A stretch of DNA of 64,000 bases from Saccostrea echinata (Eukaryota), in contig NW_026889753.1 of the NCBI RefSeq assembly GCF_033153115.1, positions 11,098,001 through 11,162,000 of the forward strand, read 5' to 3'. The translations under genes and the position numbers were made by a program. The notes below the pieces were generated by a model that was not told where the DNA came from, made no database searches, and worked only from the letters and a program-made list of their open reading frames with translations. Below are positions 58,501 through 61,500 of this stretch, in pieces (the first letter of the stretch is position 1; every line of letters starts with the position of its first letter).

Positions 58501-61500
58501 CTCATGAATCCCACCATATGGCATGCCCAGAAAAAGATTGTGCTAAAGTTTCAAGCACATGCAATGAGTAGTTGCTGAGAAATTTGGTATGGACAGATGC
58601 ACGGATAAACAGGAAGTTGACATCAGATTTGTACAAAAATGAATCTTACCATATAGAAATCCTAGACAAAGAATGTGCTAATGAGTAGTTGCTGAGAAAA
58701 CTGCAACGAAAATTTGTTACAGACAGATGCACAGATAAACAGGAAGCTGATATCAGATTTGTGTAAAAATGAATCCGACCATATGGCATGCCTAGACAAA
58801 GAGTGTGCTAAAATTTCAAGCATCTGTGATGAGTAGTTGCTGAGAAAACTGCGACGAAAATTTGTTATGGACAGACACACGGATACACAGACAGACACAC
58901 AAGGGTAAAACAGTTTACCCCCCTCTCCTTCGGAGCGGGGGTATAAAAACTGAGTATATTCTGATATTTGAAAGTTAATGCATTCTTCAGAAGTCAGTCA
59001 AGACTTATTCTTTTAAACTCTAAAAATGAAATAGGCTTGAAGCAATCAAAAAATTCAATGTCATTATAATACAAATCTGTTTTTAATATGCAATTATCTA
59101 ATTCATTGCTTCTTGTATTTATGAAAAGTCCCCATAAAATGACTGTTCTGTAATTTACTTACTGTGCTATGAAGTCTTTGAAATCATCTGACCATTGATC
59201 TGGATTAACCAGCTGAGGCTGTGGATTTCTGCAGAGCGAAATAAAACAAATCACTACGGAGGTAAATCGAAGGCACATATACAGCCATCAAAGGAAGAAA
59301 AATTCCACATTACATACCAGGAGAAATTCTGATTTATTGCATGCAGAATAAGCATAATTAGCTCTTCATCATATCGAAAATCAAAGTCTGTCTTGTATTA
59401 ACTAGATCATTGCCATCTCATCATAACCACGCCAAAGAACATGTACATGTACCCATCAACTGATAAGATTGTTGAAGATTAATGTAATCTGAAGTTTTAC
59501 AAACATCAAACATTACCCTGGTATTTAATTATCAATAAATTACCTCATAAAGAAATCTTACCGGATATCTACTTGTTTTTGCCTGCTTGTTATTATTATA
59601 ATTTTTTNNNNNNNNNNNNNNNNNNNNNNNNNNNNNNNNNNNNNNNNNNNNNNNNNNNNNNNNNNNNNNNNNNNNNNNNNNNNNNNNNNNNNNNNNNNNN
59701 NNNNNNNNNNNNNNNNNNNNNNNNNNNNNNNNNNNNNGAATAATCTCCTACTGTTCTCTAGAATACTGGTTTCATTTTTTATAAATTAATTAGTATCTCA
59801 TCAACAAGGTCTAAGAACACAATTTCAGCAAATATGTGTTGAAATCTTTTAATAAATCCATGTCTATCCTACCTCCTTAAAACCAACCTTCATTTGTAAC
59901 AATTTTTTTTTCAACTGCCTTCATATTAAGTCTAACATTAAGTGAAAGTTTGCTGTTCGTATAAGCAACGTAAGTTTTTAAAAAAAAAAAAGAAAACAGA
60001 CTGAAAAAATGTGAAAAATAATCATTGCACATATACATGTACCAGTATTTTGGAATAAAAATAATGGAACAAAAATAGCAAAGTCCCTGCACTTTTACGA
60101 AAGTGCTGGACAATAATTTGGATCATCAGCTAAGAGGTCTGAATAGAGTCAATCATGTTTTAGAATAAAATTACTGTGACCATAGCCTAGCTGGAAGGAA
60201 AATTGATTTATAGCACTCAAATACTATCTACTAAATCTAGGGTATAATAAAGCAATGCTAACTTTATTTATATATAATTCTACAATATAAGATCTTTACT
60301 ATAATTTAGCAGTGCCAGGCTTGTTCTACTAGGATGCTAATTTATTTATAAATAATCATGATAATTCTACAATATAAGATTTGCACTATAATTTAGCAAT
60401 GCCTGCCAAGTTTATTCTAGTAGGTTGTAGGAAAAGAGAAAGTCAACATTGAGAATTACTAATAGCATGTTATAGGGTTACCTGTGGAATTAAATTCATA
60501 AATTTGTTTACATTGACTTCACTTTCCCTCCAAAAAATTAAGACATTTGACTTACATATTAGGGTCACATAGTACAGAGAAAATTCAAATACACCAAACA
60601 AAATTGTAAATATATTTATCAGCATCAAATAAAAGATGATCATTTGCCAACAACTACAAACTCAAAACCCAAAATACTGATTATATTTCATAAGTTAAAC
60701 TGTTTTCTAAAGTAAACTTGAAAATGATTTAACTGACCAATAAATTGATTGAAAGCTAATAGAATTTGAATTTTATGATATCTCTAAAAAAAATTTGTTT
60801 GACTTAAGCCTTAATTCCAGTAACCACACTGATTAAAACCTATACATGTACATAGTTTATATATATATATACACTGTATAATATATATCAAAGATGAAGA
60901 ACATTTATTAATAACTTAATATAGCACAGAGATCAGAATCTTACATACAATATCAAAATTTTGACTTGAAAACTATATGAAACATATGATCAAATATATT
61001 ATACAACCTGAAAATTGTACTGATGACCACAAACCCATAACAAAAAAGAAACAATAAAACTAAAACAACTTATAAAATAAAGAAATGAGTATAGAAAAGA
61101 AAACGAAAAGAAACTCAAAAACTAAGCTTGGAACTATAATCCATAAATTCTTTTCTGACATGTAGAAAAGAAATGCAAAATAATATATTAAATCAATATG
61201 TGGAAAATACATCAGATGCAGCATCAGCAACAGCATGCCATATATTAAAGATGTAGCTCAAACAGAAGAAAAATCAGCATAGAATAGAAAACTAGAGGGT
61301 GGCAGCATGCTGAATAGAGAGGCAGCCACACCATATCTCAAGCTTACCTGATCTCGTTATTCAACAGACTAGAAGATACACAAAAAGTTAACTAGATCTC
61401 TACAAACTAAGTTAAAAAAGCTAATCAAAAAATCATTTAGTGAGGAAAAGATGTTAATTTATGATGATGGAAATTGATGTTGATGATAAATGGAATAGCA

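What the first reader, a model, noticed from the sequence alone, without database searches (positions are those of the whole stretch)
59562..61368. Twin 21-nt microexons at one position in the Myo3 kinase domain
Seen: the 4.3-kb phase-2 intron splitting ALFKIPR/NPQP holds two AG-21 nt-GTAAG units, both stop-free in frame and ending alike. 61368-61348 gives S-LLNNEI-R and 59582-59562 gives R-QKQVDI-R; either or both keep frame. Downstream of the first are GCATG motifs (~61305, ~61233) and a TGCT cluster (gcatgctgttgctgatgctg). Known: these are Rbfox- and MBNL-type motifs, and the site follows helix alphaG, a docking surface in STE20 kinases. Inference: with the loop-2 microexon, a splicing program tuning both the kinase and its motor target.
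Basis: partly seen in the sequence, partly recalled or inferred. Interest (0 to 1): 0.75.

Follow-up and report, generated by a model that had tools for sequence, protein, structure and literature searches.

The report
One real oyster Myo3 kinase microexon
One of the two proposed 21-base mini-exons in an oyster myosin-III gene is really spliced into mRNA and adds seven amino acids to a surface loop of the kinase, while the other looks like a chance match.

Summary
The window carries, on the minus strand, the class III myosin gene. Its exons equal residues 200-1710 of the RefSeq Saccostrea echinata myosin-IIIb-like X1 protein.

Both AG-21 nt-GTAAG units exist as described.

Unit 1 (61368-61348) is a real alternative cassette microexon:
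- Contigs of run X1 join 63508|61368-61348|59228 at exact GT..AG borders. A second contig joins 63508|59228 directly.
- Orthologous inserts after FKIP are annotated in Magallana (SLLNKDQ, 3 of 5 isoforms) and Crassostrea virginica (SLLNKDQS, 12 of 13). None of 8 Saccostrea isoforms has one, nor do other molluscs.
- AlphaFold2 puts the insert in a low-confidence loop just after helix alphaG.

Unit 2 (59582-59562) has no support:
- No contig covers it and no isoform carries it.
- Its acceptor is poorer in pyrimidines (0.35) than all 32 true acceptors of the gene (0.50-0.85).
- One such unit arises by chance in about 11% of shuffled introns.

The N gap is intronic and both spliced contigs bridge it.

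Rbfox/MBNL control and a joint programme with the loop-2 microexon are untested. The loop-2 microexon has no GCATG nearby.

The parts
63508..63653 (-). Exon A of the class III myosin gene (kinase domain, VIACERQ...ALFKIP + AG; ends in phase 2)
   Evidence: Translation. Exact match to P0272 residues 200-248 and borders ttttacAG|GTA.. and ..AAG|GTATGG. Laid RNA contig record 2 covers 63508-63655.
59229..63507 (-). Phase-2 intron (4279 nt as assembled, including a 130-N gap) that holds both candidate units
   Evidence: GT..AG ends. Joint 59228|63508 'skips 4279, CT..AC' in run X1.
61348..61368 (-). Unit 1: real alternative 21-nt cassette microexon. It inserts SLLNNEI between Pro and Arg of ..FKIP|RNPQP..
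   Evidence: Record 1 of run X1 (1653 nt) = 59161-59228 | 61348-61368 | 63508-63529, with no other letters and joints CT..AC on +. Donor 8/9, acceptor pyrimidines 0.75. Orthologous inserts SLLNKDQ / SLLNKDQS in Magallana and C. virginica isoforms.
61369..61391 (-). Acceptor region of the microexon (ttaactttttgtgtatcttctAG), pyrimidine fraction 0.75
   Evidence: The 32 true acceptors of the gene range from 0.50 to 0.85.
61504..61530 (-). Two GCATG upstream of the microexon (at -162 and -140; the second is a full TGCATG)
61220..61310 (-). Downstream motif zone: GCATG at +38 and +110, and a TGCT x3 cluster (gcatgctgttgctgatgctg)
   Evidence: Only 1.1% of 150-nt windows of the gene region hold two or more GCATG. 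Only 0.024% of 25-nt windows hold three or more TGCT. These are post hoc counts.
59562..59582 (-). Unit 2: AG-21 nt-GTAAGA, in-phase and stop-free (R-QKQVDI-R). Most likely a chance pseudo-exon
   Evidence: No contig of X1 touches it. Acceptor pyrimidines are 0.35, below all 32 true acceptors. No isoform in any species carries such an insert. A chance unit occurs in 114 of 1000 shuffles. Single copy in the genome.
59608..59737 (.). Assembly gap (130 N) inside the intron, 25 nt upstream of unit 2's acceptor AG
   Evidence: Bridged by both spliced contigs. Not filled or looked up.
59163..59228 (-). Exon B (A + [22 protein letters not shown])
   Evidence: Exact match to P0272 residues 248-270 and borders ..ctctgcAG|AA and ACA|GTAAGT. 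Covered by records 1 and 2 of X1.
62271..62960 (-). 35-nt tandem array (19.7 copies) in the same intron. Each unit carries donor-like GTAAGC / GTGAGA and an ATG
   Evidence: A 65-nt contig of X1 lies at 62510-62574 without a joint.
42557..42571 (-). Annotated as alternative (X1 has it, X2 lacks it)
   Evidence: No GCATG within 300 nt on either side.

Best explanation
The intron between kinase-domain exons A and B of the oyster class III myosin gene contains one genuine alternatively spliced 21-nt cassette microexon (61368-61348, minus strand).

What splicing does (shown):
- Exon A and the microexon both end in AG, and exon B starts with A. Skipping therefore gives ..FKIP-R-NPQP.. and inclusion gives ..[16 protein letters not shown]... 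This is a clean 7-residue insertion with the invariant Arg restored.
- Both splice forms are present in RNA.
- The exon is shared with Magallana and Crassostrea virginica.

Where the insert sits (predicted): in the loop between helix alphaG and the next helix of the kinase C-lobe. It lengthens a surface loop without changing the fold.

Inferred, not shown: the longer loop changes how the kinase docks a partner or its own motor domain, which is its known autophosphorylation target. Inclusion is helped by the unusually dense GCAUG and UGCU motifs around the exon (Rbfox- and MBNL-type).

The second unit (59582-59562) is most likely a chance AG...GTAAG pair, not an exon.
For: RNA:
- In run X1, a 1653-nt contig lies on 59161-59228 | 61348-61368 | 63508-63529 with no mismatch. 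Its joints sit exactly at GT..AG.
- A 276-nt contig joins 59228 | 63508 directly.
- The loose ends of both contigs read on into the neighbouring exons. I read this from the loose-end letters against the exon translations.

Splice signals: donor 8/9 and acceptor pyrimidines 0.75, against 6-9 and 0.50-0.85 for the 32 true sites of the gene. Unit 1 is the best of the 11 strong-donor candidates in the intron.

Conservation:
- Magallana: 3 of 5 isoforms covering the site have SLLNKDQ.
- C. virginica: 12 of 13 have SLLNKDQS (24 nt, still in frame).
- Shared S-L-L-N start.

Structure, using natural M. gigas isoforms:
- With the insert: pTM 0.88, helix 239-244, insert 248-254 inside the only new segment with pLDDT under 50 (244-254), next helix 269-278.
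- Without it: pTM 0.90, the same elements, no low segment there.
- The fold is an STE20-group kinase (TNIK 7xzq_A, TM 0.87).

Motifs: 4 of the intron's 6 GCATG lie within 165 nt of the exon.

Against unit 2: as listed under parts.
Against: - Only one run (X1, 75 million letters, kind guessed as RNA, tissue unknown) could be laid, and only as contigs. Inclusion level, tissue pattern and rare forms cannot be read. Contig depths (9.36 against 2.88) are means over different exons and do not rank the isoforms.
- None of the 8 annotated Saccostrea isoforms carries the insert. Annotation can therefore miss it, and by the same token absence from other molluscs' annotations is weak evidence.
- No orthologous DNA could be fetched. 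Conservation of the splice sites, of the GCATG/TGCT motifs and of unit 2's place is untested.
- The downstream GCATGs are not full TGCATG.
- The insert residues after LLN differ (NEI against KDQ), so a specific binding motif is not evident.
- The functional effect on the kinase is pure inference.
- Unit 2 cannot be excluded, because contigs drop rare variants and the sequence upstream of its acceptor is partly in the gap.
Confidence: 0.85

Rival explanations
1. Twin microexons. Both 21-nt units are real cassette exons at one position of the kinase, giving +0, +21 (either unit) and +42 products.
For: - Both units are stop-free in phase, have GTAAG donors and are the only two AG-N21-GTAAG units in the intron.
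- Two or more such units arose in only 5 of 1000 shuffles.
- Unit 2's donor scores 7/9, within the range of true donors.
- Contigs cannot show absence.
- The upstream part of its acceptor region is hidden in the gap.
Against: - No contig of X1 on 59562-59582.
- The acceptor has 0.35 pyrimidines in the 20 known bases, below all 32 true acceptors.
- No QKQVDI-like or second insert in any of the 118 representatives or 112 cluster members examined.
- Given that one unit is real, one further chance unit is expected in about 11% of introns like this one.
- The two 21-mers share only 8 of 21 bases, so they are not a duplicated pair.
Confidence: 0.07
2. Unit 1 is spliced, but as neutral, lineage-specific exonisation (splicing noise tolerated in a surface loop) with no regulatory or functional role.
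For: - The insert lies in a loop predicted to be disordered, and the fold is unchanged.
- The residues after S-L-L-N differ between genera and the length varies between 21 and 24 nt.
- It is absent from all non-oyster Myo3 proteins examined: 0 of 242 parsed.
- It was not called in 8 Saccostrea models.
Against: - Reading frame, the S-L-L-N start and restoration of the Arg are kept across Saccostrea, Magallana and C. virginica.
- It is the majority form among C. virginica models, 12 of 13.
- Splice sites are strong and the flanking GCATG/TGCT density is unusual.
Confidence: 0.15
3. The joints are an artefact: a chimeric contig or a mis-laid repeat, not a real mRNA.
For: Only one small run was available, its kind was guessed, it was laid as assembled contigs, and the middle piece is only 21 nt.
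Against: - The 21 letters match without mismatch. Both joints fall exactly on AG and GT of a unit predicted beforehand from DNA alone.
- The region is single copy in the 923-Mb assembly.
- The contig continues into neighbouring exons.
- RefSeq isoforms of two other genera carry the orthologous insert.
Confidence: 0.02

Closest known systems
Myosin-IIIb isoforms of Magallana gigas / M. angulata (e.g. P0276 = XP_034302824.2, P0277, P0162) and of Crassostrea virginica (e.g. P0290, P0293) in RefSeq
   Same: Same gene, same intron position and phase, and an insert beginning S-L-L-N directly after ..ALFKIP with the Arg restored. It is alternative there too: Magallana P0278 and P0288, and C. virginica P0291, lack it.
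   Different: The residues after LLN are KDQ(S) instead of NEI, and C. virginica has 8 residues (24 nt). These are computed gene models. I found no paper on them. None of the 8 annotated Saccostrea isoforms carries the exon.
Regulated cassette microexons of animals (neural and sensory microexon programmes; Rbfox/MBNL/QKI-controlled microexons such as Snap23, PMC12064062, abstract seen in a listing)
   Same: Length of 3-27 nt, frame-preserving, inserts a few residues into a surface loop of a folded domain, both forms expressed, and GCAUG and UGCU motifs in the flanking introns.
   Different: No tissue data and no regulator tested. There is no UGC close to the 3' splice site, the signature I recall for Srrm3/4-dependent microexons; the nearest upstream TGC is at -132. 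Conservation is shown only within oysters.
Known alternative splicing of class III myosins (IQ number and tail length of vertebrate myosin IIIb, as summarised in PMC6981383, passage read)
   Same: Same protein class. Alternative splicing creates isoforms.
   Different: The described events affect the neck and tail, not the kinase domain. The passage read mentions no kinase-domain event.
STE20-group kinase domains TNIK / MAP4K4 / MST (PDB 7xzq, 4u44, 5dh3)
   Same: Same fold (TM 0.87-0.77) and the same ..MRALFLIPRNPPP.. segment after alphaG.
   Different: Of the representatives parsed, none showed an in-frame insert followed by the restored R-N-P motif at this point; many are short fragments that end at the junction or read on into the intron. 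They lack a myosin motor.

Membership tests
Class III myosin (N-terminal STE20-like kinase + myosin motor + IQ motifs) | Kinase domain, myosin head and IQ motifs in one polypeptide | tested here: met
   The window's exons equal residues 200-1710 of P0272. Its 90%-identity cluster representative P0163 is recorded with PF00069, PF00063 and PF00612. The N-terminal 199 residues lie beyond the window.
Alternatively spliced cassette microexon | Very short exon (at most 27-30 nt) bounded by AG and GT that are actually used in mRNA | tested here: met
   Unit 1: 21 nt, with joints 63508|61368 and 61348|59228 at CT..AC on the + strand. Unit 2: not met in the one run available.
Alternatively spliced cassette microexon | Both inclusion and skipping forms expressed, with the frame preserved | tested here: met
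   Record 1 is the inclusion form and record 2 the skipping form in run X1. In-phase translation is S-LLNNEI-R.
Alternatively spliced cassette microexon | Conservation in related species | tested here: met
   Shown at protein level only: SLLNKDQ in Magallana and SLLNKDQS in C. virginica. DNA-level conservation could not be tested (closed; one search found no oyster DNA).
Rbfox-regulated exon | (U)GCAUG in the flanking introns, especially within about 300 nt downstream | tested here: met
   GCATG at +38 and +110, and at -162 and -140; only the one at -141/-140 is a full TGCATG. Two or more in 150 nt occurs in 1.1% of windows of the gene region.
Rbfox-regulated exon | Motif conservation in orthologous introns, and a response of inclusion to the factor | not testable with these tools
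   No orthologous oyster DNA could be reached. No perturbation data.
MBNL-regulated exon | Clustered YGCY (UGCU) motifs near the exon | tested here: met
   TGCT at +113, +119 and +125. Three or more in 25 nt occurs in 0.024% of windows. This is motif presence only; function is untested.
Srrm3/4 (eMIC)-dependent neural microexon | UGC motif close upstream of the 3' splice site (feature recalled, not from a call) | tested here: not met
   For unit 1 the nearest upstream TGC is at -132. The loop-2 microexon has TGC at -5.
Srrm3/4 (eMIC)-dependent neural microexon | Neural or sensory-specific inclusion | not testable with these tools
   Only one run of unknown tissue was available, laid as contigs.

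The most novel reading that the evidence does not exclude
The kinase-loop microexon is a regulated switch, for example in larval eyespot or other sensory cells. It retunes docking at the alphaG face of the Myo3 kinase and so changes autophosphorylation of the motor. It may be coordinated with the 15-nt loop-2 microexon in the very loop that class III myosin kinases phosphorylate. If so, this would be a lineage-born, two-site splicing control of an enzyme and its own intramolecular substrate. A bolder variant adds unit 2 as a rare, tissue-restricted second cassette.
Probability: 0.12. Interest if true: 0.6.

Novelty: new member of a known kind. Interest (0 to 1): 0.35.

Why it matters
- It corrects a gene model. 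A real coding microexon is missing from all eight annotated Saccostrea isoforms examined, although its orthologue is modelled in two other oyster genera.
- It gives a concrete, cheap experiment on how a short insert next to helix alphaG affects an STE20-type kinase that phosphorylates its own motor.
- It also shows the limit of reading splice-like units from DNA alone. Of two equally neat AG-21-GTAAG units, one is an exon and the other is probably noise.
- It is not a new kind of system. Regulated microexons in surface loops are well known.

Tried and rejected
A metagenome scan with exon A gave 80 loci but none from oysters; the best was 83% identical. That locus, L009, is a heterodont-like Myo3 with a 376-nt intron at the same site and no SLLN unit. 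The genome search states that the window's genome has no relatives in its collection. Conservation of unit 2, of the splice sites and of the GCATG motifs at DNA level therefore stayed untested.
- Paralogue check: the genome has one Myo3-type exon A. The other hits are at most 78% identical over 36 residues. There is thus no second copy to compare.
- Repeat check: both units lie in single-copy DNA, so neither is part of a dispersed repeat.
- Duplication of one unit from the other: rejected, 8 of 21 identical bases.
- Alternative first exon like C. virginica's (MLFSDMSFKS|R) at unit 2's place: rejected. Nothing similar lies there; the resemblance is to the 35-nt tandem array further upstream.
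- Representative search with exon A: mostly short single-exon fragments. It was useful only for finding P0075 as a full-length handle.
- Literature (listings only unless stated):
  - 'microexon' + 'myosin III': 0 papers.
  - 'microexon' + 'oyster': 6 papers, none relevant by title or abstract.
  - 'class III myosin' + 'alternative splicing' + 'kinase domain': 6 papers. Passages of PMC6981383 were read and name only neck and tail events.
  - 'microexons'/'mollusc'/'Rbfox': nothing on molluscs.
  - A claim of 'not in print' rests on these four searches of the held library only. No supplementary files were opened.
- Isoform ratio from contig depth: rejected as meaningless, because the depths are means over different exons.
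- Joined model: I did not build, print, save or search a joined spliced model of the window's gene. Only exon A was used as a query. The structure predictions used natural M. gigas isoforms instead.
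Full report
WHAT IS THERE

The window's minus strand carries a class III myosin gene. Exact-match blocks show that its exons equal residues 200-1710 of P0272, the RefSeq model 'myosin-IIIb-like isoform X1 [Saccostrea echinata]'. The first 199 residues lie beyond base 64000. With the 15-nt loop-2 microexon added, 32 introns could be placed with unique GT..AG solutions.

The finding's intron runs from 63507 to 59229. It is 4279 nt as assembled and in phase 2. It separates ..MRALFKIP+AG (exon A, 63653-63508) from A+[22 protein letters not shown] (exon B, 59228-59163).

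THE OBSERVATION

Both units are as described:
- 61368-61348 is tctgttgaataacgagatcag, between ..tgtgtatcttctAG and GTAAGC. In phase it reads S-LLNNEI-R.
- 59582-59562 is gcaaaaacaagtagatatccg, between ..taataacaagcAG and GTAAGA. In phase it reads R-QKQVDI-R.

They are the only two AG-N21-GTAAG units in the intron, and both are stop-free in phase.

Chance:
- In 1000 dinucleotide-preserving shuffles, 886 had none, 109 had one, 4 had two and 1 had three. Two is unusual, but one extra unit beside a real one is not.
- More broadly, the intron has 173 in-phase stop-free AG-3k-GT units of 3-60 nt, 11 of them with a donor of at least 7/9. Many come from a 35-nt tandem array at 62271-62960.

The named motifs are present: GCATG starting at 61310 and 61238, and gcatgctgttgctgatgctg.

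THE GAP

The N run is 59608-59737. It lies inside the intron, 25 nt upstream of unit 2's AG, so it touches no coding frame. Two spliced contigs join exon B to sequence on the far side of the gap, in the right order and strand. One protein matches the exons on both sides without a break. What stays unknown is the real intron length and the sequence further upstream of unit 2's acceptor.

RNA EVIDENCE

The look-up of sequencing runs returned one run, X1. It is held as Logan contigs, has 75 million letters, holds 0.06 of the query's words, and its kind is guessed as RNA. Laid on 59100-63700 it gave three records:
- Record 1 (1653 nt) lies on 59161-59228, 61348-61368 and 63508-63529 with no other letters.
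- Record 2 (276 nt) lies on 59204-59228 and 63508-63655, with one T>C difference.
- Record 3 (65 nt) lies inside the tandem array, without a joint.

All three joints have CT..AC ends on the plus strand, which is GT..AG on the gene's strand. The spliced pieces show that the run holds cDNA.

Unit 1 is therefore an exon with exactly the predicted borders, and the skipping form coexists with it. Nothing lies on unit 2.

Contigs show presence, not absence. Their depths (9.36 and 2.88) are means over different sets of exons, so I draw no inclusion ratio from them.

SPLICE-SITE STRENGTH

| Site | Donor match (of 9) | Acceptor pyrimidine fraction, -22..-3 |
|---|---|---|
| 32 true sites of the gene | 6-9 | 0.50-0.85 |
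| Unit 1 | 8 | 0.75 |
| Unit 2 | 7 | 0.35 (0.30 for the alternative AG three bases upstream) |

Unit 2's acceptor is below every true acceptor. Its 20 scored bases are all known sequence, so the gap does not rescue this.

RELATED PROTEINS

- A search of 1.84 billion representatives with exon A (48 aa) gave 4568 hits, mostly single-exon fragments. Many stop at, or read through..FKIPR, which fits an old intron position.
- The best full-length handle, P0075, was used to search the 90%-identity clusters over residues 150-340.
- Of 118 listed representatives, 107 could be parsed at the junction. Only two carry an insert: P0162 (Crassostrea/Magallana angulata, FKIP-SLLNKDQ-RNPQP) and P0169 (C. virginica, FKIP-SLLNKDQS-RNPQP).
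- A second search centred on the junction of M. gigas P0276 found the same three oyster clusters and no other.
- With a wider pattern that leaves oysters out, 0 of 242 parsed proteins of 900 aa or more have an insert; 53 of 295 were not parsed.

Isoforms of ten clusters carrying the insert, among those that cover the site:

| Group | With insert | Covering the site | Listed members not covering the site |
|---|---|---|---|
| Saccostrea (echinata and cucullata) | 0 | 8 | 0 |
| Magallana | 3 | 5 | 10 |
| C. virginica | 12 | 13 | 2 (start inside this intron) |
| Mytilus | 0 | 16 | 0 |
| Pectinidae | 0 | 12 | 1 |
| Mercenaria | 0 | 9 | 3 |
| Mya | 0 | 11 | 0 |
| Dreissena | 0 | 5 | 0 |
| Octopus | 0 | 14 | 1 |

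No protein anywhere has a QKQVDI-like or second insert.

So the microexon is shared by at least Saccostrea and Crassostrea/Magallana. It keeps the frame (21, 21 and 24 nt), the S-L-L-N start and the restored Arg. It is modelled in two genera but missing from the Saccostrea models. Because annotation missed it in Saccostrea, its absence from other molluscs' models is only weak evidence that it is oyster-specific.

WHERE IT SITS IN THE PROTEIN

I folded the N-terminal part of two natural M. gigas isoforms, each with a 44-row alignment.

| Form | Source | Mean pLDDT | pTM | Helices around the site | Segments with pLDDT under 50 |
|---|---|---|---|---|---|
| With insert | P0276, 318 aa | 86.9 | 0.88 | 215-229, 239-244, 269-278 | 201-207 and 244-254 |
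| Without insert | P0278, 311 aa | 88.8 | 0.90 | same elements: 239-245, 262-271 | only in 190-207 |

- The insert is residues 248-254, so it lies inside the low-confidence segment 244-254.
- The low region at 190-207 is what I take to be the activation segment.
- Foldseek matches the model to STE20-group kinases: TNIK 7xzq_A at TM 0.87, then MAP4K4 and MST1/2.
- Naming helix 239-244 'alphaG' and the next helix 'alphaH' follows the standard kinase nomenclature, which I recalled; it comes from no call.

The shown part is a 7-residue lengthening of the loop right after that helix, with the fold otherwise unchanged.

Two points are established knowledge or reference-list reading rather than tests made here. 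One is that this face is a docking surface in protein kinases. The other is that class III myosin kinases phosphorylate loop 2 of their own motor (titles of refs 87 and 89 in PMC6981383, seen). An effect of the insert on docking is my inference.

REGULATION

- Four of the intron's six GCATG lie within 165 nt of unit 1, at -162, -140, +38 and +110. Only the one at -141/-140 is a full TGCATG.
- In the gene region, 1.1% of 150-nt windows hold two or more GCATG, and 0.024% of 25-nt windows hold three or more TGCT. These are post hoc counts and I could not test conservation.
- The loop-2 microexon (42571-42557, IYGAL; present in S. echinata X1, absent in X2) has no GCATG within 300 nt on either side. 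The sequence gives no support for one shared Rbfox-type programme.
- Unit 1 has no TGC near its acceptor; the loop-2 exon has one at -5.

COMPARISON WITH WHAT IS KNOWN

- The closest relatives are the computed RefSeq isoforms of Magallana and C. virginica, which carry the orthologous exon.
- In kind, this is an ordinary regulated-type cassette microexon in a surface loop.
- The review passage I read lists only neck and tail splicing for class III myosins.
- Four searches of the held library found no paper on a Myo3 kinase-domain microexon or on oyster microexons. I opened no supplements.
- The scan's notebook has nothing on this place beyond a note on donor-seeded tandem repeats further down the gene and one on another gene.

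VERDICT

- Unit 1: a real, conserved, alternatively spliced microexon that is unannotated in this species. It is a new member of a known kind.
- Unit 2: probably chance; about 7% that it is real.
- The mechanism at the protein and regulatory levels is plausible but untested.
- Interest is modest.

Noticed in passing
window 62271-62960 (minus strand), with P0292 and P0297: A 35-nt tandem array (19.7 copies) in the same intron carries in each unit an ATG and donor-like GTAAGC/GTGAGA. In phase it reads peptides such as MLNVSDDL and MSCKQ. Two C. virginica isoforms (X7, X8) begin MLFSDMSFKS|RNPQPQ, so they start at a first exon inside this intron. That peptide resembles the repeat unit's reading, which suggests a repeat copy serves there as an alternative first exon giving a kinase-less Myo3. 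A 65-nt contig of run X1 lies at 62510-62574 without a joint.
   Followed up: partly
window 42557-42571 (minus strand): 15-nt loop-2 microexon (ATCTATGGTGCTCTT, IYGAL) between tttttgcAG and GTAAGT. It is present in S. echinata isoform X1 and absent in X2, and present in the M. gigas isoforms read.
   Followed up: partly
window 31015-31092 (minus strand): 78-nt exon ([26 protein letters not shown]) that is skipped in S. echinata isoform X3, so a third alternative cassette in the tail.
   Followed up: no
window 43450-44340 (minus strand): Directly after the exon ending at 44172, a long coding-looking tandem array reads ..PLTKTGN(S/L)YST.. in several frames.
   Followed up: no
window 12312-13337 (minus strand): 342-aa open frame ending in three C2H2 zinc fingers (..[31 protein letters not shown]..), Sp/KLF-like by eye. 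It is a separate gene downstream of the myosin.
   Followed up: no
window 5300-6900, 24700-27800, 36100-37350 (both strands): Arrays of a roughly 165-nt repeat that reads ..[47 protein letters not shown].. in long open frames. It occurs at three places, two of them inside myosin introns. Probably a satellite or a mobile-element relic.
   Followed up: no
G000 C30:18350069-18350176 and C59:923354-923461 (L004, L005); C30:18321438 and C59:892511 (L006, L007): Two pairs of identical-scoring STE20-kinase exon hits on contigs C30 and C59, about 30 kb apart in both. This looks like an unmerged haplotype or a recent segmental duplication.
   Followed up: no
L009 480-1000: A marine metagenome contig encodes a heterodont-like Myo3 exon A (83% identical). 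It has an intron of only 376 nt at the same position before ..RNPPPKMKDPDKWSDECKDFIAR, so the large intron is not general in bivalves.
   Followed up: partly
window 63115-63160 (minus strand): A run of 14 G followed by about 17 T inside the intron. Reads of X1 were skipped around 63114-63161 as a repeat.
   Followed up: no
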